From the IMG/VR virus record IMGVR_UViG_3300043570_001980, positions 124,001-188,000 of that record: a stretch of DNA of 64,000 nucleotides; one strand, written 5' to 3'. The notes below the pieces were generated by a model, which was not told the DNA's origin, did not search any database, and was given only the letters and a program-made list of their open reading frames with translations. The translations under genes and the position numbers were made by a program. This document shows positions 1,435 to 12,995 of this stretch, piece by piece (position 1 is the stretch's first letter; every line of letters starts with the position of its first letter).

Positions 1435-1470
1435 ATGTTAGAGTTTTTGTATAGTAGCCCGCAAGGGTTG

Positions 1471-1685: not shown

Positions 1686-1693
1686 TAAATTTT

Positions 1694-1783
1694 GGAGCGG
1701 TGGCCGAACGGTAAGGCAGCGGATTGCTAATCCGTACAACGTGTTAAAGCGTTGACTGGGTTCGACTCCCAGTCGCTCCGCCA
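1694..1783 (+). tRNA. tRNA-Ser(GCT)
   Basis: Cloverleaf, long variable arm, anticodon loop TT-GCT-AA, CCA end. Confidence 0.95.
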
Positions 1784-1789
1784 AGTTTT

Positions 1790-1854
1790 GAGAGTCACAT
1801 CGCCTGGATACTTCCTTTGGTAACAAAGCACTAGGTCCTGCAACCGTGGCTCTC
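1790..1854 (+). ncRNA. Unidentified small structured RNA B
   Basis: Nested stems GAGAGTCAC/GTGGCTCTC, CCTGG/CTAGG and CTTTG-GTAA-CAAAG (GNRA loop) between two tRNAs. Confidence 0.5.
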
Positions 1855-1862
1855 CCTTATTT

Positions 1863-1937
1863 GCTCGATTCGTCTATCGGTTAGGACATGCGGTTTTCAT
1901 CCGCATAAGAGCGGTTCGACTCCGCTATCGAGTACCA
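1863..1937 (+). tRNA. tRNA-Glu(TTC)
   Basis: Cloverleaf, TGCGG-TT-TTC-AT-CCGCA, CCA. Confidence 0.95.
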
Positions 1938-1942
1938 GACAT

Positions 1943-2028
1943 GGAGATGTGGCCGAGTGGCTGAAGGCGGCAGACTGTAAATCTGTTCTGTAAAAAGCGC
2001 GGTGGTTCGAATCCATCCATCTCCACCA
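1943..2028 (+). tRNA. tRNA-Tyr(GTA)
   Basis: Cloverleaf with variable arm, CT-GTA-AA loop, CCA. Confidence 0.95.
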
Positions 2029-2030
2029 GA

Positions 2031-2222
2031 ACGTTCCGGATTAGTCTCTGGATACTGTGACCCACAGGATGAGAAGTAGTGTGACAACTACGGGTGGTAG
2101 TCTTTAAACCCAAAGGCCGCTGGCAATGCGATAACGGTTCCTGTCGGGAAGCGGGTGGAAGGAGTGTGTGATGGGTATGATAGCGTCATATCTTGATACT
2201 CTATAATTACCGCCGGGGGATG
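2031..2222 (+). ncRNA. Unidentified structured RNA C (~190 nt)
   Basis: GC-rich, no credible ORF; helices TTCCGG/CCGGGG, CTGTG/CACAG, GTAGT/ACTAC, GGTGGTAG/TTACCGCC, GGAGTGT/ATACTCT. Confidence 0.55.
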
Positions 2223-2318
2223 CAGAGCATTTTTAAGTACATACCCTACGCCTACTTGGAATAGGAGATAGTGTCCATAGCACTGAAGAAAGGTTTAAAT
2301 GTACTTAAAAATGTTTTG
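2223..2318 (+). ncRNA. Unidentified structured RNA D closed by a 20-bp stem
   Basis: 2223-2242 pairs with 2299-2318; two internal hairpins with complementary loops (TGG/CCA). Confidence 0.5.
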
Positions 2319-2471
2319 TTTTTATAGTCAAGCATCGATAAGGTATCGTGTATGGACGCATACACTATTCGGGTCACAGCGGCCGGCGACTGATCCTGAT
2401 ATAACTGCATCGGCTTTGACACGGAAGCACCGGACGTCTAAATTGGCATTCTCGGTGCTTGACTATAAAAA
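2319..2471 (+). ncRNA. Unidentified structured RNA E closed by a 20-bp stem
   Basis: 2319-2338 pairs with 2452-2471; GTGTATG-GACG-CATACAC hairpin whose loop can pair with downstream CGTC. Confidence 0.6.
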
Positions 2472-2474
2472 TTT

Positions 2475-2550
2475 GGTCTTAAAGTGTTCATGGACGCACG
2501 ACGGCTTGTCACGCCGTAAGAGTGGGGATCGTTACCCCCTAAGACCGCCA
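2475..2550 (+). tRNA. tRNA-Asp(GTC)
   Basis: Cloverleaf, TT-GTC-AC loop, atypical T-loop ATCGTTA, CCA. Confidence 0.9.
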
Positions 2551-2572
2551 ACATAAAAACTCTAACTTTTAC

Positions 2573-2647
2573 CGCGGGGTACGTCAGTGGTAGACCGCCA
2601 GGCTCATAACCTGGAAGCCGGAGGTTCGAGTCCTTCCCCCGCAACCA
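2573..2647 (+). tRNA. Initiator tRNA-fMet(CAT)
   Basis: C1-A72 mismatch, CGCGGGG 5' end, CT-CAT-AA loop, CCA. Confidence 0.92.
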
Positions 2648-2655
2648 ACACAGGA

Positions 2656-2675
2656 GTGTTGTATAAATACAACAC
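2656..2675. promoter_or_regulatory. Palindromic operator-like site GTGTTGTA-TAAA-TACAACAC
   Basis: Perfect 8-bp inverted repeat upstream of the promoter at 2695. Confidence 0.6.
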
Positions 2676-2694
2676 AAAATTTTTACCTTAGAGG

Positions 2695-2723
2695 TTGACT
2701 CTAAGACATAAATAAAGTACAAT
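2695..2723 (+). promoter_or_regulatory. Sigma70 promoter for leader 2 / tRNA block 2
   Basis: TTGACT-17 nt-TACAAT; the -35 box sits inside the inverted repeat CTTAGAG/CTCTAAG. Confidence 0.8.
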
Positions 2724-2733
2724 AGAAACTAAG

Positions 2734-2865
2734 ATGAACAAGCATTTCACATTATCGTTGAAACCCATTATGCACCAGACAGCATCTGCCTGGTCACGCG
2801 GTTTTAATTTTAACTGTGGGATTACAATTCCAGGTACGCAGGGGTCCGTAGGAGACAAGATGTAA
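2734..2865 (+). CDS. Putative attenuator leader peptide 2 (43 aa, MNKHFTLSLKPIMHQTASAWSRGFNFNCGITIPGTQGSVGDKM)
   Basis: ATG near the predicted start site; GGGGTCC (2841-2847) is complementary to terminator arm GGACCCC (2889-2895); the stop codon lies inside the alternative hairpin. Confidence 0.6.
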   Translation: MNKHFTLSLKPIMHQTASAWSRGFNFNCGITIPGTQGSVGDKM

Positions 2866-2888
2866 TAAAAATACATCAAATTCTAAAA

Positions 2889-2924
2889 GGACCCCAGGAC
2901 TAAAAACCCTGGGGTTTTGTTTTT
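2889..2924 (+). terminator. Intrinsic terminator (attenuator 2)
   Basis: GGACCCCAGG-loop-CCTGGGGTTT followed by a T tract. Confidence 0.85.
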
Positions 2925-2933
2925 AAGGAACAA

Positions 2934-3119
2934 ATGATTAGAGAAGAAAGTAAAACTGAACATAAGTGTGTTTACACAGAAATTGATCAAAGAGCCAACG
3001 AAGGACTAGGGTACGCACTCACTCCCGAGATGACAAAAAAATTGATTGAAGGTAAATTCACAAGAATGCAACTGCTAACAGGCAATCGAAATAGAGTGAT
3101 TGAAACTAGCAAAGCATAA
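2934..3119 (+). CDS. Hypothetical protein (61 aa)
   Basis: AAGGA Shine-Dalgarno before ATG; first gene after attenuator 2. Confidence 0.6.
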   Translation: MIREESKTEHKCVYTEIDQRANEGLGYALTPEMTKKLIEGKFTRMQLLTGNRNRVIETSKA

Positions 3120-3293
3120 AGTGTGCATAGGCAACGCGAGCCTGACCTGCACTTAAAACATGGGCAAATGGGCGGCCTGTAGGATGAAGCTTCTTTTGTG
3201 AAGTGAAAAATTACAGCGTATTAAAGCATTCTTTAAGAACAGGCAGCCTAAGTATTTTAGAGTGCTTTAATACATACATTCCTCGGAGTGTGT
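3119..3293 (+). ncRNA. Structured intergenic RNA F including a 15-bp processing-type stem
   Basis: GTGCA/TGCAC, AGGC/GCCT and CTGTA/TACAG helices; 3218-3232 pairs with 3259-3273. Confidence 0.4.
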
Positions 3294-3305
3294 TAACTAT
3301 TTTAT

Positions 3306-3381
3306 TCCTTGATAGCTCAGTTGGTAGAGCACTTGACTGTTAATCAAGTTGTCCCTGGTTCGAGCCCAGGTCGAGGAGCCA
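3306..3381 (+). tRNA. tRNA-Asn(GTT)
   Basis: Cloverleaf, CT-GTT-AA, CCA. Confidence 0.95.
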
Positions 3382-3387
3382 GATATA

Positions 3388-3463
<76 letters not shown>

Positions 3464-3468
3464 TTTAT

Positions 3469-3545
3469 ACCACCTTAGCTCATTTGGATAGAGCACCAGG
3501 CTACGAACTTGGGGGTAGGGCGTTCAACTCGCTCAGGTGGTACCA
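3469..3545 (+). tRNA. tRNA-Arg(ACG)
   Basis: Cloverleaf, CT-ACG-AA, CCA. Confidence 0.92.
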
Positions 3546-3551
3546 GTTTTT

Positions 3552-3626
3552 GGGGGATTGGTATAGTTGGGAACACAGTAGCTTTGCAAGCTTCAGTCAG
3601 CGGTTCGACCCCGCTATCCTCCACCA
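3552..3626 (+). tRNA. tRNA-Ala(TGC)
   Basis: G3-U70 pair, TT-TGC-AA, CCA. Confidence 0.93.
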
Positions 3627-3679
3627 ACAAATTTTTAAGGAGAGTCCAAATGGACAGTGATAAGAGTGGTAAGATTTGT

Positions 3680-3755
3680 GGGACGTTAGCTCAGTTGGTA
3701 GAGCAGTAGACTTTTAATCTATTGGTCATTGGTTCGAATCCAATACGTCCTACCA
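3680..3755 (+). tRNA. tRNA-Lys(TTT)
   Basis: Cloverleaf, CT-TTT-AA, CCA. Confidence 0.95.
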
Positions 3756-3872
3756 TATAAAAGCATTCTTGGCGTAAGTCAAAGCGGGAGAAGAAGCTGA
3801 GTATCTGCAGATGCAAAAGTTTCAGCAACTAGATTGCCTCCTAGGCCTGCTGTTGAGAGTGCCTCTATATGG
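3753..3872 (+). ncRNA. Unidentified structured RNA G closed by a ~22-bp stem
   Basis: CCATATAAAAGCATTCTTGGCG pairs with TGTTGAGAGTGCCTCTATATGG; internal GCTGA/TCAGC and CTAG/CTAG helices. Confidence 0.5.
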
Positions 3873-3946
3873 TAATATAGCATAGTGGCTAATGCAGTTG
3901 CTTCATACGCAACCTATCGTTGGTTCGAGTCCAACTATTACCACCA
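3871..3946 (+). tRNA. tRNA-Met(CAT), elongator (Ile2 not excluded)
   Basis: Fully paired acceptor stem, TT-CAT-AC, CCA. Confidence 0.85.
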
Positions 3947-3954
3947 GGCTTTGT

Positions 3955-4031
3955 TGGAGATTCGCCAAGTTGGTCAAGGCATCGGATTTTGATTCCGACA
4001 CGCATAGGTTCGAATCCTATATCTCCTGCCA
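3955..4031 (+). tRNA. tRNA-Gln(TTG)
   Basis: Cloverleaf, unpaired 1-72, TT-TTG-AT, CCA. Confidence 0.93.
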
Positions 4032-4037
4032 GATTTT

Positions 4038-4112
4038 AGCCGTGTAGCTCAGAGGAAGAGCATTGTCTTGATAAGGCAAGGGTCGACATTTCGAAACTGT
4101 CCATGGCTACCA
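4038..4112 (+). tRNA. tRNA-Ile(GAT)
   Basis: Cloverleaf, TT-GAT-AA, atypical T-stem, CCA. Confidence 0.88.
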
Positions 4113-4130
4113 ATATAAGTAAATTACAAT

Positions 4131-4204
4131 GCGGGGTTCGTATAGTGGTAATACCTGAGCCTTCCAAGCTCATGCGGAGAGTTCGATTCTCTTACCCCGC
4201 TCCA
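4131..4204 (+). tRNA. tRNA-Gly(TCC)
   Basis: Cloverleaf, CT-TCC-AA, U73, CCA. Confidence 0.95.
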
Positions 4205-4210
4205 GGTTTA

Positions 4211-4285
4211 GGGTGATTAGCTCAGCGGTAGAGTCGCTGCCTTACACGCAGTTTGTCGGGAGTTCGATCCTCTCATCACCCACCA
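4211..4285 (+). tRNA. tRNA-Val(TAC)
   Basis: Cloverleaf, CT-TAC-AC, CCA. Confidence 0.95.
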
Positions 4286-4291
4286 GTTATT

Positions 4292-4368
4292 CGGAGTGTA
4301 GCACAGCCTGGTAGTGCGCCTGGTTTGGGACCAGGAGGTCGTAGGTTCGAATCCTACTATTCCGACCA
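4292..4368 (+). tRNA. tRNA-Pro(TGG)
   Basis: Cloverleaf, TT-TGG-GA, CCA. Confidence 0.95.
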
Positions 4369-4373
4369 ATTAT

Positions 4374-4451
4374 GCAACGGTGGCAGAGTGGTCAAATGCA
4401 ACGGATTGCAAATCCGTAAAGTCGTGAGTTCAAATCTCACCCGTTGTTCCA
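4374..4451 (+). tRNA. tRNA-Cys(GCA)
   Basis: Cloverleaf, TT-GCA-AA, U73, CCA. Confidence 0.93.
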
Positions 4452-4455
4452 ATTT

Positions 4456-4529
4456 GTATCCATAGTGTAATGGCAGCATTGCGGTCTCCAAAACCGTCAG
4501 TCTAGGTTCAAGTCCTAGTGGGTACGCCA
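4456..4529 (+). tRNA. tRNA-Trp(CCA)
   Basis: Cloverleaf, CT-CCA-AA, CCA end. Confidence 0.93.
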
Positions 4530-4551
4530 GTATTAAATATAAGAAAGCCAT

Positions 4552-4989
4552 ATGATAAAAGAAACACAAACAAGAACAATAGTAAAAGCAGTTATATACA
4601 GATTTTTCTCAGTGGTAGCTATCATGTTGTTATCACTGCTATTCGGCGCTAGCATGGCATCGGCTGGCATAGTCGGACTAATTGTAATTGTGGTAGGTAC
4701 AGCAATTTATTACGTACATGACAGGTTGTGGTTGCTTACTGGATGGGCAAGAAACGATTCAGGGGTTGACGATATCAAACGTAGTGTAATTAAAACCATT
4801 ATCTATCGTGCAATCACCATGACGGTTTCTTACTTGATTGCAATATTCATTATTAAAAGCAGTGGGTCCAACGCTGTGCTATTTGCAATAGCACAGGCAT
4901 TGACAAATATGACTTTTTTCTTTATTGTTGAGAGAGTATTTAATTTTATTGAATGGGGAAAAATTAAACCTGAATCTCAGGTAAATTAA
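4552..4989 (+). CDS. Membrane protein with two DUF2061-like repeats
   Basis: Tandem RTIVKAVIYR...YYVHDRLW and RSVIKTIIYR...FFIVERVFNFIEWG units. Confidence 0.75.
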   Translation: MIKETQTRTIVKAVIYRFFSVVAIMLLSLLFGASMASAGIVGLIVIVVGTAIYYVHDRLWLLTGWARNDSGVDDIKRSVIKTIIYRAITMTVSYLIAIFIIKSSGSNAVLFAIAQALTNMTFFFIVERVFNFIEWGKIKPESQVN

Positions 4990-4992
4990 TTA

Positions 4993-5084
4993 GGAAGCGT
5001 GGTCGAGTCAGGTTTATGGCAACAGTCTTGAAAACTGTCGGCTCTTAACAGGGTCCGTGAGTTCGAATCTCACCGCTTCCACCA
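4993..5084 (+). tRNA. tRNA-Ser(TGA)
   Basis: Long variable arm, CT-TGA-AA, CCA. Confidence 0.95.
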
Positions 5085-5098
5085 AATTGGAGTATTCA

Positions 5099-5383
5099 AT
5101 GTCAAACGAAACCGATAAATTCAAACATAGCAAGCGTCTACAGAAAGACAAAAACGCTGTTAACAAACAAATCAAAATTGCCAAAGAATTTGGGATACCA
5201 GTTGAAGAGCCACATAAGTTTGCCAAACATCATGCCATGAACTGTGGCACCCCAAATTGTGTGATGTGCAGTAATCCTAGAAAAACCTTTAAAGAGTTGA
5301 CACAGCAAGAGAAACGAATGTTTCAGGACACCGATACTCCTCGTGATCGACACAGCAATGGATTGCCGCCTGATCAAGATTAA
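5099..5383 (+). CDS. Hypothetical basic phage protein with a C-x4-C-x2-C motif
   Basis: GGAG SD then ATG at 5099; HAMNCGTPNCVMCSNPR. Confidence 0.75.
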   Translation: MSNETDKFKHSKRLQKDKNAVNKQIKIAKEFGIPVEEPHKFAKHHAMNCGTPNCVMCSNPRKTFKELTQQEKRMFQDTDTPRDRHSNGLPPDQD

Positions 5384-5388
5384 TCTAT

Positions 5389-5464
5389 GGTGACTATAGT
5401 GTAACGGTCAACACCACGGATTGTGATTCCGTTAATATGGGTTCGATTCCCATTAGTTACCCCA
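5389..5464 (+). tRNA. tRNA-His(GTG)
   Basis: G-1:C73 pair, TT-GTG-AT, CCA. Confidence 0.95.
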
Positions 5465-5466
5465 AT

Positions 5467-5542
5467 GCCAAGATAGCTCAGTTGGTAGAGCACCGGACTG
5501 AAAATCCGGGTGTGGGCGGTTCGATCCCGTCTCTTGGTACCA
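5467..5542 (+). tRNA. tRNA-Phe(GAA)
   Basis: Cloverleaf, CT-GAA-AA, CCA. Confidence 0.95.
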
Positions 5543-5543
5543 A

Positions 5544-6008
5544 TTACTGAGTGATCTGGCCTGTTACAGCATCTACATGCACAGGTTGGCGACCATCAAA
5601 TGTAAAATCATAAAAAGGATTTCCTCGATAATCAACAGTTTGACGCAACCTGCAAAACAGCCAGGTGTCTGTAATACCTGCTTTGGTCATGGCCTGCTGT
5701 GCCTGATTACAACTCAGGGTAGGTGGATATACAAATGCCTGACACTCAGCCACACGGGAGTCATCAAACGTGGGGCCAGTAGCATGTCCTGTAATGTCAA
5801 CAGTTATAGCATAAGGTTTGGTATCTTCGGATCCTTGCCAGCAGGTATACATAGTTCCATTACGGTCAGCCTCAGCAAGATAAAATTTAGATCCGTTTTG
5901 ATGTAGATCCATAAGGCTCTTGGCTCCCCAGATCTGTTGATCAAAACTCAAGGGAGACAACAACCCTAGTCGTCGAAAATATTGTCTTATAAGTGTTATT
6001 ATTGACAT
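5544..6008 (-). CDS. Hypothetical protein with a PepSY-like C-terminus, inserted antisense in the tRNA array
   Basis: AAGGA SD, TAAATA upstream; C-terminus ...VHVDAVTGQI. Confidence 0.7.
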   Translation of the reverse strand: MSIITLIRQYFRRLGLLSPLSFDQQIWGAKSLMDLHQNGSKFYLAEADRNGTMYTCWQGSEDTKPYAITVDITGHATGPTFDDSRVAECQAFVYPPTLSCNQAQQAMTKAGITDTWLFCRLRQTVDYRGNPFYDFTFDGRQPVHVDAVTGQITQ

Positions 6009-6034
6009 AATTACATTTCCTTTTGTTGATATAT

Positions 6035-6238
6035 TTATCTGGTTAGAATAGCGGCCTTTAGAGGTTCGATTCCGTCTCTTGGTACCAACAATGGATCAGG
6101 AATAAACTTAGGTTTGGATGTATTCAACAGTGGGTCAGGAACAAATACACGATGTGTACTATGGTAAGTTGGAGAAATATAAGACTGTTTTGCCGATTTC
6201 TCATACAATATGTCAGTAGATGTGTTACAATCAATCAT
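6035..6238 (-). CDS. Hypothetical protein (67 aa) with a F(V/I)PDPLL repeat
   Basis: TAAATA-cagt-ATG context; C-terminus reads antisense through the duplicated tRNA-Phe 3' end. Confidence 0.45.
   Translation of the reverse strand: MIDCNTSTDILYEKSAKQSYISPTYHSTHRVFVPDPLLNTSKPKFIPDPLLVPRDGIEPLKAAILTR
6063..6088 (+). repeat. Direct repeat of the tRNA-Phe 3' end (att-like scar)
   Basis: GGTTCGATTCCGTCTCTTGGTACCAA matches 5518-5543 at 25/26 positions. Confidence 0.85.
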
Positions 6239-6250
6239 ACTGTATTTAAA

Positions 6251-6327
6251 GCCCCGGTGACGGAATTGGTATACGTGTTGGTCTTAGAAGCCAAATTTTA
6301 GGAGTTCGAGTCTCCTCTGGGGCACCA
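6251..6327 (+). tRNA. tRNA-Leu(TAG), short variable loop
   Basis: CT-TAG-AA loop, Leu-type D arm, A73, 77 nt only. Confidence 0.88.
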
Positions 6328-6360
6328 ATTTAGCATATATAATAGAACAAAGGAAGCATC

Positions 6361-7140
6361 ATGAAGAGACTTTTTGTAATGCTTGTATTACTTGTTAGCA
6401 TACCCTCTTATGCATTTCCTAGCAATTCAAGCATTCTGGTATTGGATGTAAATTCCAACCACCCACGATATGTACATAATGGCGAGCAAGTTCGTTCTAT
6501 TGCCAGCATTACTAAATTAATGACTGCAATGGTAACCCTTGACTACGATAAAGATCTAAGTAGAAAACTTTTGCTCAGTAATCGTGTCACGAGCAGTTTA
6601 CCTAAACAATATTATACCAGACACGAGCTGTTAAATGCAATGTTGGTTCGCAGTGATAATGCCGCTGCCGAAACCATTGCTGAAGATTATCCTGGCGGTA
6701 GACACGCATTTGTTAAACAAATGAACCTACATGCCAAAATGTGGGATATGAACAATACTGCATTTATTGATCCAACTGGCCTGGGCGTGTTCAATGTCAG
6801 CACAGTATATGATGTGGCCAACATGATACAAACAGCATCCAGTTATTGGTTTATCAGAGAAACATCAGTTAAAAAGAATGTTGCCATTGCTACCCTAGCC
6901 AAAAAGAAAACACGAACTGTAAATTTAAACAATACCAATCAATCACTGTTATTTAAATTTGACAATATTGTAATCAGCAAAACTGGTCTTACCAGTGCCG
7001 CCGGTTGGTGTATGAGTTTGTTTGTAACGGAAAAAGACAAAGACTACATAATTGTAGTACTAGGAAGTAAAAACAAAAACGAAAGAACAGCTACAGTAAA
7101 GGACATCATGTATAGCCATGTACTTGATCCCAACTCGTAA
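6361..7140 (+). CDS. D-alanyl-D-alanine endo/carboxypeptidase (peptidase S11, PbpG/DacA-like)
   Basis: Signal peptide; SxxK (ASITK), SxN (SDN) and KTG motifs. Confidence 0.9.
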   Translation: MKRLFVMLVLLVSIPSYAFPSNSSILVLDVNSNHPRYVHNGEQVRSIASITKLMTAMVTLDYDKDLSRKLLLSNRVTSSLPKQYYTRHELLNAMLVRSDNAAAETIAEDYPGGRHAFVKQMNLHAKMWDMNNTAFIDPTGLGVFNVSTVYDVANMIQTASSYWFIRETSVKKNVAIATLAKKKTRTVNLNNTNQSLLFKFDNIVISKTGLTSAAGWCMSLFVTEKDKDYIIVVLGSKNKNERTATVKDIMYSHVLDPNS

Positions 7141-7151
7141 CCAAGGTAACC

Positions 7152-7622
7152 ATGAAAAAAATCAATCTAGAAGAAGTCAAGAGCTTTATTGAAGCACAAG
7201 GGCCAGATACTAAAATTTATCTAGGCTGTGACTCTGAACGTATGCGCATTGATGGTCAATGGCATGCTGACTATGTCTTGGCTGTTGTTGTACACATCAA
7301 CGGAAATAACGGTTGCAAGTTATTTGGTGAAGTACAACGTGAACGTGATTACGATCACAAAGTCCATAGGCCAGCAATGCGCCTTATGTCCGAAGTGTAT
7401 AAGGTCAGCGAGTTGTACCTAAAGCTAGCAGATGTACTTGAAGGTAGACAGGTTGAAGTACACTTAGACATTAACCCCGATGATCAATATGGATCTAGCT
7501 GTGTTATCAGCCAGGCCATTGGCTATATCAAAGGAACATGTAATGTTGTACCGTTTGTTAAACCCGATGCATTTGCTGCCAGCTATGCTGCCGATCGTTT
7601 CAAAAGTTTGAAAGTAGCCTAA
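7152..7622 (+). CDS. RNase H-like YkuK family protein
   Basis: KIYLGCDS...RLMSEV...EVHLDIN...KPDAFAASYAADR pattern. Confidence 0.75.
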   Translation: MKKINLEEVKSFIEAQGPDTKIYLGCDSERMRIDGQWHADYVLAVVVHINGNNGCKLFGEVQRERDYDHKVHRPAMRLMSEVYKVSELYLKLADVLEGRQVEVHLDINPDDQYGSSCVISQAIGYIKGTCNVVPFVKPDAFAASYAADRFKSLKVA

Positions 7623-7624
7623 GA

Positions 7625-7777
7625 ATGCCAATGTACGAAACCACTGTTAGAACACCGCAAGGTGAAGAGAAGAAAAGAATATATGCACAGGACGTAAAAG
7701 AAGCCAAAAAGCTTTTTGAACAACTGTATGGTGGACCAAGAGCAGTTCCGTACATTCCACATATGGTGCCAAGTTGA
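7625..7777 (+). CDS. Hypothetical protein (50 aa, not in the ORF track)
   Basis: MPMYETTVRTPQGEEKKRIYAQDVKEAKKLFEQLYGGPRAVPYIPHMVPS fills the gap between the YkuK gene and tRNA-Gly. Confidence 0.65.
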   Translation: MPMYETTVRTPQGEEKKRIYAQDVKEAKKLFEQLYGGPRAVPYIPHMVPS

Positions 7778-7778
7778 T

Positions 7779-7852
7779 GCGGGTATGGTGTAATGGTAAC
7801 CCGAAACCTTGCCAAGGTTTAGTTGAGAGTTCGATTCTCTCTGTCCGCTCCA
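7779..7852 (+). tRNA. tRNA-Gly(GCC)
   Basis: Cloverleaf, TT-GCC-AA, U73, CCA. Confidence 0.92.
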
Positions 7853-8544
7853 AGCTTCATTGACAATCGTTCAGCAAAAACTCGATGCCTGTCAATGCCC
7901 GGATGGCAAAGGTCTCTACCAAGTGAATTAGAGTAGCTTGATGTGAGTGCGTTAGCATTAACTGTAACACACTTGATTCCTTTGGCAGTACACAGCATTT
8001 GTATACCTAATGTATTTTTTTCAGTGTTGAAATAATTGTTATTTTCGTCTACTGTCCAAAGTTTAATAAACTCTTTTGTTGATGGATCTTCAATATCTAC
8101 ATTTTTAATATTATCGTTGGTTACCAGTTCACATCTTATGCCCGGAGGTTGCATAAAAATAACTGTGGTTGGATTAATTTTATCTAGCCATCCATGACAT
8201 AACCTAAATGCTGTATCAGCGGAGGAGCCGGCAATGCCAAGATTAACACATTGTAAATTTAGATTTGTTGATACTAACTCAGGCCAAATTAAGTCTACAG
8301 GTAACCCCATGCCCATTGTAAAACTACACCCAAGAAACATGATACTAGGTTTGTCAGTAAACTCTTTACACCTAAACCCATGTGAGTTAAATTCATATGT
8401 AAAGTGATTATCTATCCAGCCCTGTAGTACTAGATCACCGTGGCGTTTGTCAAGATTTTTCTTGTATAATTCTTCAGTGTCCATGGGCAACCAGTCTACA
8501 GTTTTGTTAGCAAGATTTTTATAAAAGGAATCATAATTAGGCAT
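7819..8544 (-). CDS. SGNH/GDSL-like hypothetical protein, antisense in the tRNA array
   Basis: FLGCSFTMG, NLGIAGSS and DLCHPG motifs; last codons overlap tRNA-Gly. Confidence 0.7.
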   Translation of the reverse strand: MPNYDSFYKNLANKTVDWLPMDTEELYKKNLDKRHGDLVLQGWIDNHFTYEFNSHGFRCKEFTDKPSIMFLGCSFTMGMGLPVDLIWPELVSTNLNLQCVNLGIAGSSADTAFRLCHGWLDKINPTTVIFMQPPGIRCELVTNDNIKNVDIEDPSTKEFIKLWTVDENNNYFNTEKNTLGIQMLCTAKGIKCVTVNANALTSSYSNSLGRDLCHPGIDRHRVFAERLSMKLGADRENRTLN

Positions 8545-8585
8545 GTTTTTATTTACACTAAAACTTTATCAATATTACAAATTCT

Positions 8586-8659
8586 GCTCTCATAGTATAA
8601 TGGCATTACACGCCCTTGGTAAGGGCGAAACACAAGTTCAATTCTTGTTGAGAGCACCA
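8586..8659 (+). tRNA. tRNA-Thr(GGT)
   Basis: Cloverleaf, TT-GGT-AA, CCA. Confidence 0.92.
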
Positions 8660-8662
8660 TAT

Positions 8663-8737
8663 CGGCCCTTGGTGAAATGGATATCATTCCAGGCTTCGAA
8701 CCTGGAGGTGGGAGTTCGATCCTCTCAGGGCCGGCCA
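8663..8737 (+). tRNA. tRNA-Arg(TCG)
   Basis: Cloverleaf, CCAGG-CT-TCG-AA-CCTGG, CCA. Confidence 0.9.
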
Positions 8738-8790
8738 TTATATTAGTCTTTAATATTAAATACACACATAACGTCATATATAAGGTTACC

Positions 8791-9225
8791 ATGCTACACT
8801 TTGTCCAATCATTCACAGATAACATCATTGAACTGCTCAAAGAAGATCCAGTTCGCCCTCACATCCCTACTAGTAGTCGCATAGGCACAAACAGAGATAT
8901 ATTTGTGCTTCGTGATGAAAATGGTAAAGCCAAAGCTATCACTTGTGCTAGCTATCAAAACATTATCCCGCTTGATGAAAGCGAATTATTTGAACCAGTT
9001 ACTGATCCTAGTGTAGTAGTTTTTTATACTATTTGGAGTTATGCACCCGGTGCAGGTCGTGAACTTATTCTAGACGCAGTCAAACACATAAGAGAAAACA
9101 AACCCAATATTAAAAGATTTGTTACTCTGAGTCCTCCCACAGAAATGGCTAAAAAATTCCATATTAAAAACGGTGCAAACACTTTTAGAATTAACAATTT
9201 GACTATCAATTACGAATACCCATGA
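8791..9225 (+). CDS. Hypothetical phage protein, GNAT-like fold suspected
   Basis: Start reassigned to ATG 8791 because the upstream extension overlaps a tRNA; FYTIWSYAPGAGRELI...FVTLSP...FHIKNGA. Confidence 0.65.
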   Translation: MLHFVQSFTDNIIELLKEDPVRPHIPTSSRIGTNRDIFVLRDENGKAKAITCASYQNIIPLDESELFEPVTDPSVVVFYTIWSYAPGAGRELILDAVKHIRENKPNIKRFVTLSPPTEMAKKFHIKNGANTFRINNLTINYEYP

Positions 9226-10397
9226 ACATCACCAACGAAGATGTTGTTAGGTACATTAGAACAAGTCAACAACCAACAGATTACAAAATAGTCTGTAGAA
9301 TTGGCGATGATTTGATATCCAACACTGATACGTTAAATTCGGCTGAATTAAAACAGTTTGTTTTTTCTACACTTGATACATTAACACAACATTTTGATTT
9401 TGGTACAAGTTTTGCACAGCCTGTGGCTATATTGTACCAAGAATACATCAGCGAAGAGTTAATGGTTTATCTGCATCAGTGGTTACGCACAAAATGTGCT
9501 GATATAGAAAACATCACTGTGGTGTTAGGTCAGAGTTTGGGAATGAAAGAATGGTGGAAAGAATGGTGTAGCATTTATCACGAAAAATCTTTTTTAATTG
9601 TTGAGTTGTCTTGGGCCTATTGCGAGTGTGCTTATCGTACTTGTTTTAGCCCGAGTGAATTTGTTAGTCATCCAGACATAGTCTCTGAAAAAAATAAAAT
9701 GATGCAATATCATTTTAGTTACTGGGCAGGTGGTACAAAACACTACAATGATAGATCATACATTGCCATGCGAGTATTGGAGTTTTTAGATTATTGTTTA
9801 TTTGATAGTCTGTATAAATTACCATCAAAACAACTGCTATTAGACTATGCAGAACAAATCACTTATTTTAAAAGTCAGGACACTATTGATTTAATATCAT
9901 CATTGTATGACACAAAAGTCAACAGCGATGGTGAGGTTAAAATAAAAAATATCAACAACAATACTGCAATTAAAAAAAGAGTTCAGCAATTTTGTTTTGT
10001 TGATAGTTTTACATGGAATAACAACCGCTGTTGCTTTGCTTCGGTGATCAGAGAAACAAAAAACAATGATTTACATCAAGAATTCACAGAGAAAACTATG
10101 AGAGCTTTTTGGCATCATTTGGTAGCTATACCTCTTTGTTATAATGCAGTAAGTAATTTAGAAGCACAAGGATTTTGGTTCCCGCATGACTTGATTGATT
10201 ACAGATATCAAGGAGTGCGTGATTTTCACGAAAGGGTATCATTGGCAATGCAATCAGTTAAAAAGTTAATTGCAGATCACAGCATTAATGATTTAAAAAA
10301 CTATTACAACAATCACACAGAACACTTTTATTACAATGCTAAATTAATAAAAGACTTAGGCGATGACTCGCAACGCCTACATCAAAAATACATTTAA
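9222..10397 (+). CDS. Glycosyltransferase-like protein, ET..TEK family
   Basis: ASVIRET...FTEKTMRAF...GFWFP motif. Confidence 0.55.
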   Translation: MNITNEDVVRYIRTSQQPTDYKIVCRIGDDLISNTDTLNSAELKQFVFSTLDTLTQHFDFGTSFAQPVAILYQEYISEELMVYLHQWLRTKCADIENITVVLGQSLGMKEWWKEWCSIYHEKSFLIVELSWAYCECAYRTCFSPSEFVSHPDIVSEKNKMMQYHFSYWAGGTKHYNDRSYIAMRVLEFLDYCLFDSLYKLPSKQLLLDYAEQITYFKSQDTIDLISSLYDTKVNSDGEVKIKNINNNTAIKKRVQQFCFVDSFTWNNNRCCFASVIRETKNNDLHQEFTEKTMRAFWHHLVAIPLCYNAVSNLEAQGFWFPHDLIDYRYQGVRDFHERVSLAMQSVKKLIADHSINDLKNYYNNHTEHFYYNAKLIKDLGDDSQRLHQKYI

Positions 10398-10405
10398 GGA
10401 TTAAC

Positions 10406-10654
10406 ATGGCAAGAATTACATCAGAAGATGCAGTAGAACAAGTTGGTAATCGATTTGATCTTGTGCTAATTGCAAGTCGCAGAGTTAGAGAACTTCGCAA
10501 CGGCTATCGCTCTCACATTGCTTCCACAAATGGAGCATTGGTTACTGCTCTTAAGGAAATTGAAACAGGACATGTGGGTAGAGAGTATTTGTTAAAACCT
10601 ACAGAAGTGAAAAATCCCGACCGTCGACCCAGACGTTCAGACAAAGTTTTTTAA
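10406..10654 (+). CDS. rpoZ: RNA polymerase omega subunit
   Basis: MARITSEDAVEQVGNRFDLVLIASRRVREL...ALKEI is the omega signature; AAGGA SD. Confidence 0.93.
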   Translation: MARITSEDAVEQVGNRFDLVLIASRRVRELRNGYRSHIASTNGALVTALKEIETGHVGREYLLKPTEVKNPDRRPRRSDKVF

Positions 10655-10657
10655 TGC

Positions 10658-10859
10658 AATAGTTAAAGGCGTGAGCGAAAGAAAGCCTAGCCAGCAGATC
10701 CTAACTACCAGGGAAGTGATCACCCATAGCCTACTGTAGCCGATATACTGGCCGAGCCAAGTGGCACTTGGTTGAACATGCTGATGGGAGTGTTACGGCA
10801 ACGCTGATACCGTTGATAAAACCTAATGCTTTAAACACAGGGTAGTGCCTTTAACTATT
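10658..10859 (+). ncRNA. Unidentified structured RNA H (~200 nt) after rpoZ
   Basis: AATAGTTAAAGGCG pairs with TGCCTTTAACTATT; GC-rich interior with hairpins; no ORF; strand assumed from context. Confidence 0.55.
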
Positions 10860-10876
10860 TTTTATTACAAAAACAG

Positions 10877-10905
10877 TTGACTGGTAACTCAAACAATTGT
10901 ATAAT
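10877..10905 (+). promoter_or_regulatory. Sigma70 promoter
   Basis: TTGACT-17 nt-TATAAT. Confidence 0.85.
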
Positions 10906-10926
10906 TTAAGTTAAAGAAAGGAGGGC

Positions 10927-11517
10927 ATGATGCCTAGTGTATTTTTAGTCAGCGACACGCACTTTGGTCACATGGGTGTCTGCCGCTTCACACGAGATGA
11001 CGGAGTTACAAAACTTCGTCCCTGGGATGATGCTGACGAAATGGATGAGGAAATGATCCGACGTTGGAACGACCGTGTGCGTCCCAGTGACAAGGTGTAT
11101 CACCTGGGCGATGTTGTTATCAATCGTCGAGCATTAAAGACATTACATCGATTAAACGGAGACAAGGTGTTGATCCGTGGAAACCATGATATCTTCCGCG
11201 ATGACGAATACAGAGAGTACTTTCGTGAACTTCGGGCATACCATGTGATGAACGGAATGATATTGAGTCATATCCCTATCCATACAGCAAGCCTGGGCAG
11301 ATTTGGTGTCAACATACATGGTCACCTTCATGCCAATCGTGTGATGATGGAACCTGTGGGCAAGTATGGCATCCCTGTAGTCGACGTTCGCTATCATTGT
11401 GTATGCGTGGAACAAACAGACTTTACACCTATCTTGTTTGAAGATGTGATCAAACGCATTGAGGCAGAAGGCGGTGTAGTTGGTTTTAAAAACGGCAACG
11501 GACCAAGTGTGGACTAA
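10927..11517 (+). CDS. Calcineurin-like metallophosphoesterase
   Basis: DTHFGH, GD, GNHD, SH and HGHLH motifs. Confidence 0.9.
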   Translation: MMPSVFLVSDTHFGHMGVCRFTRDDGVTKLRPWDDADEMDEEMIRRWNDRVRPSDKVYHLGDVVINRRALKTLHRLNGDKVLIRGNHDIFRDDEYREYFRELRAYHVMNGMILSHIPIHTASLGRFGVNIHGHLHANRVMMEPVGKYGIPVVDVRYHCVCVEQTDFTPILFEDVIKRIEAEGGVVGFKNGNGPSVD

Positions 11518-11518
11518 T

Positions 11519-11956
11519 ATGAAAGAAAAATTTATTCAAGCCTACATGGATGTTGCTAAAACATTTGCAGAACTCAGCCATGCTCGTAGATTACATGTGG
11601 GTGCTATTGTGGTCAAGGATGATAGAATTATCAGTATTGGCTACAATGGCATGCCTGCTGGTTGGGATAACAACTGTGAAGATGAGATTTGGGATAAAAC
11701 TGGTGATTATGAATTGAAAACAAAGCCAGAAGTACTTCACGCAGAAACCAACGCCATTGCAAAATTAGCCAAGAGCACAGAAAGCGGAGACGGTGCTGAT
11801 TTGTTTGTTACTCATGCTCCGTGCATTGAATGTGCCAAACTGATTTATCAATCCGGCATACGCAGAGTATTTTATGGCAAAGCATACCGAGATGATTCAG
11901 GCATAAAGTTTTTAGAGAAATCAGGAGTAACAGTCAATAAAACTGTTGACGTATAA
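11519..11956 (+). CDS. dCMP deaminase
   Basis: GYNG, HAE and PCxxC zinc motifs. Confidence 0.92.
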   Translation: MKEKFIQAYMDVAKTFAELSHARRLHVGAIVVKDDRIISIGYNGMPAGWDNNCEDEIWDKTGDYELKTKPEVLHAETNAIAKLAKSTESGDGADLFVTHAPCIECAKLIYQSGIRRVFYGKAYRDDSGIKFLEKSGVTVNKTVDV

Positions 11957-11964
11957 TCAATAAG

Positions 11965-12036
11965 TAAGAGTTATTGCTGTATGAAGCAAAGAGAAAAGTG
12001 TTCTGGACGGGGGTGCGAATCCCCCCAGGTCCACCA
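11965..12036 (+). ncRNA. ssrA: Two-piece (permuted) tmRNA, acceptor piece (5' end approximate)
   Basis: GGAC-GGGGG-TGCGAAT-CCCCC-CAGGTCC-A-CCA; pairs with downstream GGGCCTG giving G3-U70. Confidence 0.92.
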
Positions 12037-12047
12037 AAAGGATTTTT

Positions 12048-12173
12048 ATGTTTGAGAATTGGCATTGGGTTTATATGTGGGGCATCTTAGTTGTAGTCAA
12101 CTATATGTTTTGGATTATAAAAAGTCTTTTTGATGGGCCTGACCTAGATTCGACAGGGCAACAAGTAAATTAG
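12048..12173 (+). CDS. Putative 41-aa membrane micropeptide starting in the tmRNA intervening segment
   Basis: AAGGA SD 6 nt before ATG; MFENWHWVYMWGILVVVNYMFWIIKSLFDGPDLDSTGQQVN. Confidence 0.45.
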   Translation: MFENWHWVYMWGILVVVNYMFWIIKSLFDGPDLDSTGQQVN

Positions 12174-12316
12174 TGGACAGCTCGGCAATGCAGAAGCCGT
12201 AGGACAGGGGTAACCCGGTTGTAGAAGCAAAAAAAGTAAACGCAAACGACTCACAGTTCGCATTGGCAGCTTGATAAAAGCCGTCTAGGGTAAGACATAC
12301 CTCGTAACAGAAACTC
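12135..12316 (+). ncRNA. ssrA: Two-piece (permuted) tmRNA, coding piece; tag ANDSQFALAA
   Basis: GGGCCTGACCTAGATTCGAC 5' end; resume codon GCA at 12242; tandem stops TGA TAA at 12272-12277. Confidence 0.93.
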
Positions 12317-12317
12317 A

Positions 12318-12344
12318 GAGACCCGCTTCGGCGGGTTTTCTTTT
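12318..12344 (+). terminator. Intrinsic terminator after tmRNA
   Basis: GAGACCCGC-TTCG-GCGGGTTTT plus T tract. Confidence 0.9.
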
Positions 12345-12440
12345 GACCAAAATACCCCAAATTTTAATTGATGTTACCACAAACTCTAATACATAGTAGC
12401 GAATGATTTAAAGCTCATTCTCTTTTTAAGGAAAACAAAA

Positions 12441-12995
12441 ATGAAGAAAATTTTAGCAATTATTTCTATTGCGATCAGTAGCACAGCGTTTGCTGGTTCA
12501 ATTACAATTGAAGGCGGAAAAGGCGACACCATTGGCGGTAACGACCAAATGGGCACTAACTTTACATTGAGTGAAAGTATCAACAACACATTCAGTGTTC
12601 ACACGCAACTTGCATCTAGTCAGACTGATAACACAAATTCAGTTAGCACACGCTTAGAAGTCGGTGGTACTGCAACTACTCCATTGTTTGGTTCTGTCAA
12701 AGGTTATACCAAAGTAGCACTAGGCCAAAGATATGGCACTAGCGGTCAGTTTACATACTACTCTATTGAGCCTGGTATTGCTGTTCCTTTAACTCCTAGT
12801 CTAACAGCTAGAGTTGCTTACCGTTATCGCACAGCCACAGACAATGCCAATGTAAACAAAGACACTACTAATACAGTACGTGCTGGCGTAGCATATGCAA
12901 TCAACAAAAAGGATGCTGTGGGTTTTAGATTTGATAGAATCACCGGTGATTCACGTCAGAATGGTTACAATATGTTCTACACACGCAGTTTCTAA
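12441..12995 (+). CDS. Outer-membrane beta-barrel (porin-like) protein
   Basis: Signal peptide ending AFA, alternating beta-strand pattern, C-terminal YTRSF. Confidence 0.8.
   Translation: MKKILAIISIAISSTAFAGSITIEGGKGDTIGGNDQMGTNFTLSESINNTFSVHTQLASSQTDNTNSVSTRLEVGGTATTPLFGSVKGYTKVALGQRYGTSGQFTYYSIEPGIAVPLTPSLTARVAYRYRTATDNANVNKDTTNTVRAGVAYAINKKDAVGFRFDRITGDSRQNGYNMFYTRSF

What the first reader, a model, noticed from the sequence alone, without database searches (positions are those of the whole stretch)
10406..10859. Phage rpoZ immediately followed by a ~200-nt structured RNA
Seen: a clear omega subunit with a basic divergent tail, then 3 nt later a stem-closed non-coding element. Established: omega forms part of ppGpp site 1 on proteobacterial RNA polymerase, and stable-RNA promoters are stringently controlled. 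Inference: a phage omega could retune the stringent response so tRNA transcription continues under starvation. The adjacent RNA might bind polymerase, but I see no 6S sequence match.
Basis: partly seen in the sequence, partly recalled or inferred. Interest (0 to 1): 0.6.

Follow-up and report, generated by a model that had tools for sequence, protein, structure and literature searches.

The report
Phage omega gene with tRNA-slot RNA
A 342-kb T4-like freshwater phage carries its own copy of the small omega subunit of bacterial RNA polymerase, and directly behind it, where related phages have a tRNA gene, sits a strongly conserved 200-base non-coding element that matches no known RNA family and whose function is unknown.

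Summary
Window 10406-10654 encodes an 82-aa omega subunit (Pfam E=1.8e-11) that aligns to residues 1-64 of E. coli omega. Three bases after the stop, a 13-bp perfect helix (10658-10670 / 10847-10859) closes a roughly 200-nt ORF-free element.

The genome is a T4-like jumbo phage with no RNA polymerase of its own detected. Omega is common in its relatives: 22 of 25 large records, and 184 IMG/VR stretches.

In these phages rpoZ is nested in same-strand tRNA arrays. In 21 of 56 distinct loci a tRNA starts 3-7 nt after the rpoZ stop.

The element fills that slot only in a narrow clade, where omega is at least 88% identical. There its 130-nt core differs by 0-5%, while four-fold sites of the adjoining rpoZ differ by 12-37%. 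Variation clusters in two hairpin regions and includes two compensatory pairs.

It is not 6S, tRNA, a T4 rnaC/rnaD relative or any Rfam family. Most of its interior fold is unproven.

Best reading: a selectively maintained stable-RNA or processing module co-transcribed with rpoZ. Nothing supports polymerase binding. The stringent-response idea is untested; omega keeps the ppGpp-contacting residues 2-5.

The parts
10406..10654 (+). Phage rpoZ: an 82-aa RNA polymerase omega subunit. Residues 1-62 form the conserved omega core; residues 63-82 form the basic tail.
   Evidence: ORF list. Pfam RNA_pol_Rpb6 E=1.8e-11. Alignment to E. coli omega 1-64. Purifying selection: 11 synonymous against 3 non-synonymous codon changes versus L007, and 19 against 10 versus L251.
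10655..10657 (+). 3-nt spacer between the stop codon and the closing helix. It is variable and is deleted in L292-L294, where the stop codon overlaps the first bases of the helix.
10658..10859 (+). Conserved non-coding element of about 202 nt, measured from arm to arm of the closing helix. It is single-copy and has no open frame.
   Evidence: Copies in L003-L008, L251/252 and L290-L294. Core differs 0-5% against 12-37% at four-fold sites of rpoZ.
10658..10670 (+). 5' arm of the closing helix. The inner 9 bp (10662-10670) are kept in all seven copies.
   Evidence: One A-U to G-U change. The outer 4 bp are broken by a U-to-C change in L292-L294.
10847..10859 (+). 3' arm of the closing helix. Conservation in the more distant genomes (L251, L292-L294) ends at this arm, as does the rpoZ-plus-element module.
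10702..10721 (+). Variable zone 1: substitutions and 1-nt insertions in L251 and L294. A 3-bp G/C hairpin with a variable loop is possible here.
10755..10773 (+). Central 8-bp hairpin with a 3-nt loop. It is invariant except for one U-A to U-G change in L294.
   Evidence: helix 7.
10787..10832 (+). 3' hairpin domain (helices 9 and 10), the only part with comparative support. The apical hairpin at 10799-10815 has three different stem and loop versions.
   Evidence: Two compensatory pairs (A-U/G-C, each 4:3) and five wobble-compatible changes against two breaks. Sequences.
10860..10866 (+). T-run directly after the closing helix. It may mark a 3' end or weak termination signal, or be part of the A/T-rich stretch upstream of the next promoter.
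   Evidence: The scan called no canonical terminator here. The tail differs in L251 and L292-L294.
10877..10905 (+). Context: a sigma-70-type promoter (11 of 12 consensus positions, 17-nt spacer) that drives the metallophosphoesterase gene at 10927-11517. It also exists in relatives that lack the element.
9222..10397 (+). Context: a 391-aa ORF of unknown function that ends 8 nt before rpoZ. It is probably co-transcribed, since no + strand terminator or strong promoter lies between them.
   Evidence: Its L251 homologue is only 43% identical.
1694..8737 (+). Context: same-strand array of 25 tRNA genes, interspersed with small ORFs, upstream of rpoZ.
11923..12365 (+). Context: permuted (two-piece) tmRNA gene, 1.1 kb downstream of the element.
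   Evidence: ARAGORN and Rfam RF01850 / RF04321.

Best explanation
The locus has two layers.

(1) rpoZ. The gene encodes a genuine omega subunit. The phage is T4-like, has no detectable polymerase of its own and uses sigma-70-type promoters. It presumably supplies omega to the host's RNA polymerase. In this phage group rpoZ is a small mRNA embedded in same-strand tRNA operons, typically in the order tRNA, about 20-40 nt, rpoZ, 3-7 nt, tRNA.

(2) The element. In the window's narrow clade the slot behind the stop codon holds a roughly 200-nt non-tRNA element closed by a 9-13-bp helix. I read it as a selectively maintained non-coding RNA that is co-transcribed with rpoZ and cut out of, or ending, that transcript at the closing helix, as the tRNA does in relatives. 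It would thereby define and protect the rpoZ mRNA 3' end. Because about 130 nt are constrained at the sequence level, it probably also has a sequence-specific partner, protein or RNA, that is still unknown.

Shown: the gene's identity, the tRNA-array nesting, the slot equivalence, the conservation, and partial structural support. Inferred: transcription on the + strand, processing at the helix, and any action in trans.
For: Omega identity.

Phage identity and dependence on host polymerase:
- Gp23 capsid, E=1e-100, and a terminase.
- No Sigma70_r2, Rpb2_6 or T7-type polymerase match (the T7-type search had no positive control).
- A strong sigma-70-type promoter.

How common omega is: 184 IMG/VR stretches, 412 protein clusters, and 22 of 25 related large records.

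Nesting in tRNA arrays: 51 of 56 distinct loci carry same-strand tRNAs within 3 kb; in 21 a tRNA starts 3-7 nt after the stop; about 26 have a tRNA ending 19-57 nt before the start. The same pattern holds in the window itself: three ORFs end 1-6 nt before a tRNA.

The element:
- It starts 3 nt after the stop, and 0 nt in L292-L294.
- It has no promoter of its own.
- The closest relatives lacking it have only 14 nt between the stop and the next promoter.
- rpoZ plus the element travel as one block. In L251 and L292-L294 the upstream protein is 43% identical and the downstream gene is unrelated, yet conservation runs from rpoZ through the element and stops at the closing helix's 3' arm.
- The core differs 0-5% against 12-37% at four-fold sites of rpoZ.
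- Changes cluster in two hairpin regions, with two compensatory pairs. The covariation score is 0.069 against 0.051 +/- 0.006 in shuffles (0 of 500 reach it), and the slid-partner controls score lower.
Against: - No expression data. The only RNA library that holds related sequence covers a relative's rpoZ and has no contig beyond the first bases of the element.
- The fold is not thermodynamically special: z=-1.45, and -2.51 for the L251 copy.
- Most predicted helices never vary, and one (helix 8) is broken three times in L294.
- The seven sequences are close relatives, so the shuffle control overstates the support.
- The closing helix alone is near chance expectation genome-wide.
- A plain terminator or tRNA would be enough to make a 3' end, so that role does not explain 130 constrained bases.
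- The constraint could act on DNA rather than RNA.
- No homologue was found outside the clade that could reveal a function.
Confidence: 0.55

Rival explanations
1. The element is a purely cis-acting 3'-UTR device. It would act as a terminator, 3'-exonuclease block or insulator between the rpoZ transcript and the next promoter, with no life as a separate RNA.
For: It sits directly after the stop codon and before a strong promoter. A closing helix is followed by a T-run. Including the flanks gives an outer 9-bp helix and z=-2.04.
Against: - The terminator scan calls nothing here, whereas the phage uses compact G+C-rich terminators elsewhere.
- Relatives manage with a 14-67-nt spacer or a tRNA.
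- The T-run and the outer helix are not conserved in L251 or L292-L294.
- About 130 nt of sequence-level constraint is far more than a stem-loop needs.
Confidence: 0.2
2. The element is a 6S-like or otherwise polymerase-binding RNA that works together with phage omega.
For: Co-inheritance with rpoZ as one block. Its length of about 200 nt is in the 6S range. The sequence-level constraint suggests a specific partner.
Against: - No Rfam hit at E<=10 for the region, for the L251 copy (only two sub-threshold chance-level hits to unrelated families) or for RF00013 across the whole genome.
- The predicted topology is a multi-branched junction, not a rod with a central bubble.
- It is absent from most phages that carry the same omega family with the same basic tail.
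Confidence: 0.07
3. The constraint acts on DNA. The element would be an inserted mobile or recombination element with terminal inverted repeats, or a protein-binding region, spread between lineages by recent exchange rather than kept by RNA function.
For: - 13-bp perfect terminal inverted repeats.
- Insertion-like presence or absence relative to the closest relatives.
- In L007 the identical tract runs on through the promoter to 10905.
- T4-like phages exchange modules, and an HNH-type gene is nearby.
Against: - Single copy in 342 kb.
- No copy away from rpoZ in 25 related records, IMG/VR or the JGI metagenome scans.
- No clear target-site duplication.
- In L251, L292 and L294 the element has diverged 7-14% in a patterned way (hairpin tips plus compensatory pairs), which is not what recent transfer gives.
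- G-U pairs fit the + strand RNA.
Confidence: 0.12
4. The element is a functionless spacer, and the closing helix is a chance inverted repeat.
For: z=-1.45. Inverted repeats of this size occur at about the chance rate genome-wide.
Against: The core differs 0-5% where neighbouring four-fold sites differ 12-37% in six comparisons. The block boundary coincides with the helix.
Confidence: 0.03

Closest known systems
Bacterial RNA polymerase omega subunit (RpoZ; Pfam PF01192), e.g. E. coli omega
   Same: The domain scores above the Pfam cut-off. It is 45-50% identical to gammaproteobacterial omegas over residues 1-62. The N-terminal residues 2-5 that help coordinate ppGpp at site 1 are kept.
   Different: - It is encoded by a T4-like jumbo phage, not in a gmk-rpoZ-spoT operon.
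- It is nested in tRNA arrays.
- Its tail is short and basic (net about +3 to +4), whereas I recall E. coli's tail as longer and acidic or Gln-rich.
- It has no PHROG family, and no verified isolate phage in GenBank carries it.
Mixed tRNA-mRNA operons and 'tRNA punctuation' (E. coli thrU-tyrU-glyT-thrT-tufB; mitochondrial transcripts; RNase P cleavage at the MALAT1 mascRNA), cited from my own knowledge
   Same: A protein-coding segment is flanked within a few bases by tRNA genes on the same strand. tRNA-processing enzymes would then set the mRNA ends.
   Different: In this clade the 3' punctuation is a 200-nt non-tRNA element with no tRNA-like arms. Processing has not been shown.
Phage T4 small stable RNAs rnaC and rnaD (species 1 and 2) at the end of the T4 tRNA cluster
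   Same: They are non-tRNA RNAs of unknown function, encoded with the tRNA genes of a T4-type phage. They are the same order of size (119-139 nt) and are made from tRNA-operon transcripts (the processing is from my own knowledge).
   Different: There is no sequence similarity. T4 rnaC carries a tRNA-like T arm and folds with z=-4.6, while this element has no T arm and z=-1.45.
6S RNA (Rfam RF00013)
   Same: Similar length, a closing helix, and a thematic link to RNA polymerase.
   Different: No covariance-model match at E<=10. The predicted fold is branched rather than a rod with a central bubble.

Membership tests
RNA polymerase omega subunit (RpoZ / Rpb6, PF01192) | Pfam domain match above the curated cut-off | tested here: met
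   44.3 bits against a cut-off of 26, E=1.8e-11, profile positions 1-51 of 53. The whole-genome scan finds the same place.
RNA polymerase omega subunit (RpoZ / Rpb6, PF01192) | Collinear alignment with the structured part of omega in solved bacterial polymerases | tested here: met
   Query residues 1-62 align to residues 1-64 of E. coli-type omega chains, E=3e-12 to 8e-12.
RNA polymerase omega subunit (RpoZ / Rpb6, PF01192) | N-terminal residues 2-5 that contact ppGpp at site 1 in E. coli | tested here: met
   A2, R3, I4, T5 here. In 121 family members: A 115, R 116, I 110, T 117. The role of these residues is taken from PMC7676912.
RNA polymerase omega subunit (RpoZ / Rpb6, PF01192) | Binds the beta-prime subunit and assembles into core polymerase | not tested
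   The host is unknown and beta-prime exceeds the size limit of the complex predictor. The claim rests on homology only.
6S RNA (RF00013) | Covariance-model score at or above the gathering score (46.4 bits) | tested here: not met
   No match at E<=10 in window 10350-11000, in the L251 copy or in the whole 342-kb genome.
6S RNA (RF00013) | Rod-like fold: closing stem, large central bubble, terminal stem | tested here: not met
   Single-sequence and consensus folds give a multi-branch junction behind a 9-13-bp helix. The interior is poorly defined.
6S RNA (RF00013) | Binds sigma-70 holoenzyme and templates product RNA | not testable with these tools
   Needs biochemistry.
tRNA or tRNA-like RNA | Cloverleaf with D, anticodon and T arms, detectable by ARAGORN or Rfam RF00005 | tested here: not met
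   25 tRNAs and a tmRNA were found in the window, none at 10655-10870. L251 has none either.
Intrinsic (Rho-independent) terminator | Short G+C-rich hairpin with a 3-8-nt loop, directly followed by a T-run | tested here: not met
   The scan reports no + strand terminator between 9000 and 10922. The helix is A/U-rich at its base and encloses 176 nt. The T-run is present in the window but is not conserved.
Miniature inverted-repeat transposable element | Terminal inverted repeats | tested here: met
   13-bp perfect arms.
Miniature inverted-repeat transposable element | Several dispersed copies, flanked by target-site duplications | tested here: not met
   Single copy in the genome. Every copy found anywhere lies directly behind rpoZ. 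The flanks are T-rich, so a duplication cannot be called.
T4 rnaC / rnaD stable RNAs | Sequence similarity to the T4 genes | tested here: not met
   Only chance matches of 7-10 nt. nhmmer finds nothing near the element.

The most novel reading that the evidence does not exclude
Phage omega, with its basic tail and its expression from tRNA operons, replaces host omega on the host polymerase and changes how that enzyme treats stable-RNA promoters or ppGpp. In this clade, the sequence-constrained 200-nt RNA delivered on the same transcript is a polymerase-associated or omega-tail-associated cofactor or decoy of a kind not yet described.
Probability: 0.07. Interest if true: 0.85.

Novelty: new variant of a known kind. 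Interest (0 to 1): 0.57.

Why it matters
T4-type phages are the textbook case of taking over host RNA polymerase with small phage proteins, but a phage-encoded copy of a polymerase subunit is not part of that picture.

Omega turns out to be a common gene of a large group of uncultured freshwater jumbo phages. It is regularly wired into their tRNA operons and has a family-wide basic tail. I found no PHROG family for it, no verified isolate phage carrying it, and no paper describing it in five of the six full-text searches I ran.

This gives a concrete, testable handle on two questions: what omega does beyond helping assembly, and whether phages adjust the ppGpp and stable-RNA control of the host enzyme.

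The adjoining element is a clean example of a young, strongly constrained non-coding element sitting where a tRNA normally sits. If it is excised like a tRNA, it would extend the list of non-tRNA products of phage tRNA operons. Forty years on, T4's rnaC and rnaD still have no known function.

Tried and rejected
**RNA family and homologue searches (all negative)**
- Rfam at gathering and E-value thresholds on the region and on the L251 copy; RF00013 on the whole genome.
- nhmmer, BLAST and a covariance model (R1) against 162 loci and 23-25 whole related phage records. Only the same clade matched.
- Exact-pattern scans of IMG/VR (two) and the JGI metagenomes (one). They returned the same lineages plus random hits.
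- BLAST against 401 sampled genomes of the class holding Vibrio and, in GTDB, Burkholderiales. Only chance-level matches appeared, so no cellular source was found among those searched.

**Alternative readings tested**
- Coding potential. All frames have stops. A +1 reading from the T-run at the stop would add 30 aa, but both L007 changes are non-synonymous in that frame. The 35-aa minus-strand ORF is frameshifted in L251. Rejected.
- Own promoter. None was found in the rpoZ 3' part.
- A retron, an attC site, a hammerhead ribozyme and a T4 MotA-box middle promoter were each considered by eye and dropped because defining parts were missing. These are my own reading, not tool tests.
- Homology to the conserved tRNA-array RNA at 1460-1695, or to T4 rnaC/rnaD: none.
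- A 9-nt identity with E. coli 6S recalled from memory: at chance level and not pursued.

**Expression**
One RNA run (X20) laid on 8500-12500 (4001 letters) carries contigs of a relative over rpoZ and none beyond the first bases of the element. It is uninformative.

**Process notes**
- A first attempt to align the tRNA-array RNA used the wrong strand for three loci and was redone.
- No complex or structure prediction was run. The omega assignment did not need one, and the host beta-prime is unknown.

Full report
**Observation.** Window 10406-10654 (+) is an 82-codon ORF. It matches Pfam RNA_pol_Rpb6 at E=1.8e-11, above the curated cut-off. It aligns residue for residue with positions 1-64 of the omega chains in solved E. 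coli-type polymerases. Three bases after the stop codon, a perfect 13-bp inverted repeat (10658-10670 / 10847-10859) encloses 176 nt and is followed by a T-run. Every frame of the enclosed stretch has stops.

**Limits of the word 'structured'.** The free energy is not unusual: z=-1.45 on the + strand and -1.32 on the - strand. Apart from the closing helix (pairing probability 0.98), the predicted helices have probabilities of 0.11-0.53. Perfect inverted repeats of this size and spacing occur about as often in the 342-kb genome as I estimate chance would give.

**What the genome is.** The window is bases 124001-188000 of a 341,990-bp IMG/VR virus record rated 95% complete.
- It has a T4-type major capsid protein (Gp23, E=1e-100) and a large terminase.
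- It carries 25 tRNA genes and a permuted tmRNA in the window.
- No match was found to sigma-70 region 2, to the beta-subunit catalytic domain or to T7-type polymerase (the last search had no positive control).
- Near-consensus sigma-70-type promoters precede the tRNA blocks and the gene after the element.

The phage therefore most likely transcribes with the host enzyme. This is an inference.

**The omega family.**
- Relatives of this omega are encoded on 184 IMG/VR stretches, by 412 protein clusters in the large collection, and in 22 of 25 related large phage records. One 524-kb record has two copies.
- The 120 nearest proteins are 55-99% identical to the query. The best cellular matches found are 45-56% identical, although that scan was pattern-limited.
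- Across the family the N-terminus (M-A-R-I-T-S-E) is almost invariant. The C-terminal tail is short (median 15 aa) and basic in 115 of 121 members.
- Codon changes are mostly synonymous, so the gene is under purifying selection.
- No PHROG family matches it.
- The nine GenBank 'phage' records with an omega-like match are not credible phage genes. The two records labelled Acinetobacter phage MD-2021a hold a bacterial gmk-rpoZ-spoT context (inspected in one). Two are Salmonella whole-genome contigs. Two are unverified Campylobacter phage records and two are 1.6-1.7-kb unannotated records, all four carrying an E. coli-type match of the same identity. One is a weak match in a 4.4-kb fragment.
- Five full-text searches found no paper describing phage omega. 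That is absence from the library searched, not proof that nobody has seen it.

**rpoZ sits inside tRNA operons.**
- Among 56 distinct rpoZ loci with 3 kb of flank, 51 carry tRNA or tmRNA genes; every nearest tRNA or tmRNA listed lies on the rpoZ strand.
- In 21 loci a tRNA starts 3-7 nt after the rpoZ stop. It is mostly tRNA-Trp, but also Val, Gly or His.
- About 26 loci have a tRNA ending 19-57 nt before the rpoZ start.
- L077 is typical: tRNA-Val, tRNA-Gly, rpoZ, then tRNA-Trp three bases after the stop.
- The same arrangement recurs in the window's own array: ORFs ending at 4989, 5383 and 7777 are followed by tRNAs at 4993, 5390 and 7779.

In the window's lineage two protein genes separate the last tRNA (8737) from rpoZ, and the tmRNA follows 1.1 kb downstream.

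**Distribution of the element.**
- It is single-copy in the genome.
- It is found only directly behind rpoZ, and only in a narrow clade whose omegas are at least 88% identical to the window's. These are the window type (L003-L006, L267), L007/L008, L290/L291, L251/L252, L292/L293 and L294.
- The next relatives lack it. Contigs with a 71%-identical omega have the same flanking genes but only 67 nt between rpoZ and the phosphoesterase gene. In L253 just 14 nt separate the stop codon from the -35 hexamer. L086 and L097 are similar. In L009 rpoZ abuts a different gene.
- In L251 and L292-L294 the upstream protein is only 43% identical and the downstream gene is unrelated. Even so, similarity runs from the rpoZ start through the element and stops at the 3' arm of the closing helix.

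rpoZ plus the element therefore behave as one module.

**Conservation.** The table compares each copy with the window. The element's core is the 130 nt outside the two variable zones.

| Copy | Four-fold sites of rpoZ differing | Element core differing |
|---|---|---|
| L007 | 17% | 0.8% |
| L290 | 12% | 0.8% |
| L251 | 26% | 0.8% |
| L292 | 37% | 0.0% |
| L293 | 37% | 0.8% |
| L294 | 31% | 5.4% |

This is strong purifying constraint, and it outweighs the weak thermodynamic signal. One caveat: in L007 the identical tract continues through the downstream promoter to 10905.

**Structure.** Substitutions and indels concentrate at 10702-10721 and 10791-10824. The consensus fold of seven copies keeps several features:
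- the inner 9 bp of the closing helix, with one A-U to G-U change;
- the central 8-bp hairpin, with one U-A to U-G change;
- a 3' hairpin domain with two compensatory A-U/G-C pairs and five wobble-compatible changes. Its tip has three different stem and loop versions.

The covariation score is 0.069 against 0.051 +/- 0.006 in shuffles (0 of 500 reach it), and the slid-partner controls are lower. However, the sequences are closely related, 47 of 61 pairs never vary, and helix 8 is broken three times in L294. Only the closing helix, the central hairpin and the 3' domain should be regarded as supported.

**What it is not.** The negative searches are listed under Tried and rejected. In brief:
- No Rfam family matches, 6S included.
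- No tRNA-like gene is called.
- There is no similarity to T4 rnaC/rnaD or to the window's other structured RNA.
- No copy or structural homologue exists in related phage genomes.
- No source was found in 401 sampled bacterial genomes.
- It is not coding and has no promoter of its own.
- It lacks the several dispersed copies expected of a mobile element.

**Mechanism.**
- Shown: a genuine omega gene lies in a stable-RNA operon context. A constrained non-coding element begins 0-3 nt after its stop, exactly where relatives have a tRNA. The module boundary lies at the closing helix.
- Inferred: the element is transcribed with rpoZ and separated from it, or ends the transcript, at the helix, as RNase P and 3' trimming would do at a tRNA. 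That would give the rpoZ mRNA a defined, protected 3' end. Because about 130 nt are constrained in sequence rather than only in pairing, it probably has a specific partner.

I put this reading at 0.55. The rivals are a purely cis-acting 3'-UTR device (0.20), a DNA-level or recently exchanged element (0.12), a polymerase-binding 6S-like RNA (0.07) and a functionless spacer (0.03).

The omega call and the 'no 6S' statement are right. The polymerase-binding idea has no support, and it is weakened because most phages with this omega family lack the RNA.

The stringent-response idea is untested. Omega residues 2-5, which coordinate the ppGpp phosphates at site 1 (PMC7676912), are retained. On sequence alone, then, the phage protein would be expected to rebuild site 1 rather than remove it. 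By the E. coli rule (my own knowledge), negative control by ppGpp and DksA goes with G+C-rich discriminators. The phage promoters seen here have A/T-rich sequence after the -10 element, so they may not be stringently inhibited in any case. The phage also carries a MazG-like gene. The tie between rpoZ and tRNA operons is real and is the best lead for why the phage carries omega.

**Novelty and limits.** Omega is a known protein. A phage-borne, basic-tailed omega embedded in tRNA operons is a new variant of it and, as far as I could search, undescribed. The element is an orphan. There are no expression data: the one RNA run available was uninformative, and read laying was used once on 4001 letters. 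The host is unknown. All copies are close relatives, and two further omega clusters with about 275-nt spacers could not be fetched.

Noticed in passing
window 1460-1695 (+): A stem-closed RNA of about 225 nt lies just downstream of a consensus sigma-70-type promoter (about 1368-1397) and overlaps the first bases of tRNA-Ser (1694). It folds with z=-4.08. Copies 79-98% identical occur in six related large phage records. The consensus fold has 79 pairs, 18 of them with compensatory changes. It has no Rfam match and is not homologous to the rpoZ element. It looks like an undescribed structured RNA family of these phages.
   Followed up: partly
window 2319-2471 (+), also 2030-2318: A second stem-closed element has a 23-bp closing helix (z=-6.16) and ends 4 nt before tRNA-Asp. 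Just upstream, a G+C-rich non-tRNA stretch follows tRNA-Tyr, with a weak partial match to the permuted tmRNA model (20 bits) and a 20-nt inverted repeat at 2223-2318.
   Followed up: partly
window 4989/4993, 5383/5390, 7777/7779: Three small ORFs inside the tRNA array (145, 108 and 50 aa) end 1-6 nt before a tRNA gene. This is the same 'tRNA punctuation' pattern seen at rpoZ in related phages. After RNase P cleavage the stop codons would lie almost at the mRNA 3' end, which is notable in a phage that carries its own tmRNA.
   Followed up: no
window 11923-12365 (+): A permuted (two-piece) tmRNA gene of the betaproteobacterial type, with tag peptide ANDSQFALAA. It contains an insertion of about 80 nt relative to the Rfam models. 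Lake metagenome contigs show several variants and replaced segments here.
   Followed up: no
L251 2085-2100; L292, L293, L294 (just after the element): In the more distant lineages the next called gene starts with ATG 3-8 nt after the closing helix's 3' arm, with no Shine-Dalgarno sequence. In L292-L294 the rpoZ stop codon overlaps the first two bases of the helix. The element may therefore also affect translation of its neighbours there.
   Followed up: no
genome G000:C1:110951-111181 (outside the window): A MazG-like pyrophosphohydrolase gene (25.3 bits, above the cut-off). No RelA/SpoT domain is present in the genome. MazG has been proposed in other phages to lower (p)ppGpp, which bears loosely on the stringent-response idea.
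   Followed up: no
G004 (IMGVR_UViG_3300027749_002876, 524,565 bp): 115415-115561 and 426333-426467: This 524-kb related record carries two rpoZ copies.
   Followed up: no
window 10646-10654 with 10865-10874: In the window lineage the T-run at the rpoZ stop can pair with an A-run after the element. That adds an outer 9-bp helix, extending the closing stem to about 22 bp with an internal loop, an RNase III-like shape (z=-2.04 with flanks). It is not conserved in L251 or L292-L294.
   Followed up: partly
window 44397-49505 (-) and 39251-40744 (-): Three adjacent ORFs of about 450-490 aa match radical-SAM PHROGs, next to a Nol-like carbamoyltransferase. A 2430-aa ORF lies at 56532-63824.
   Followed up: no
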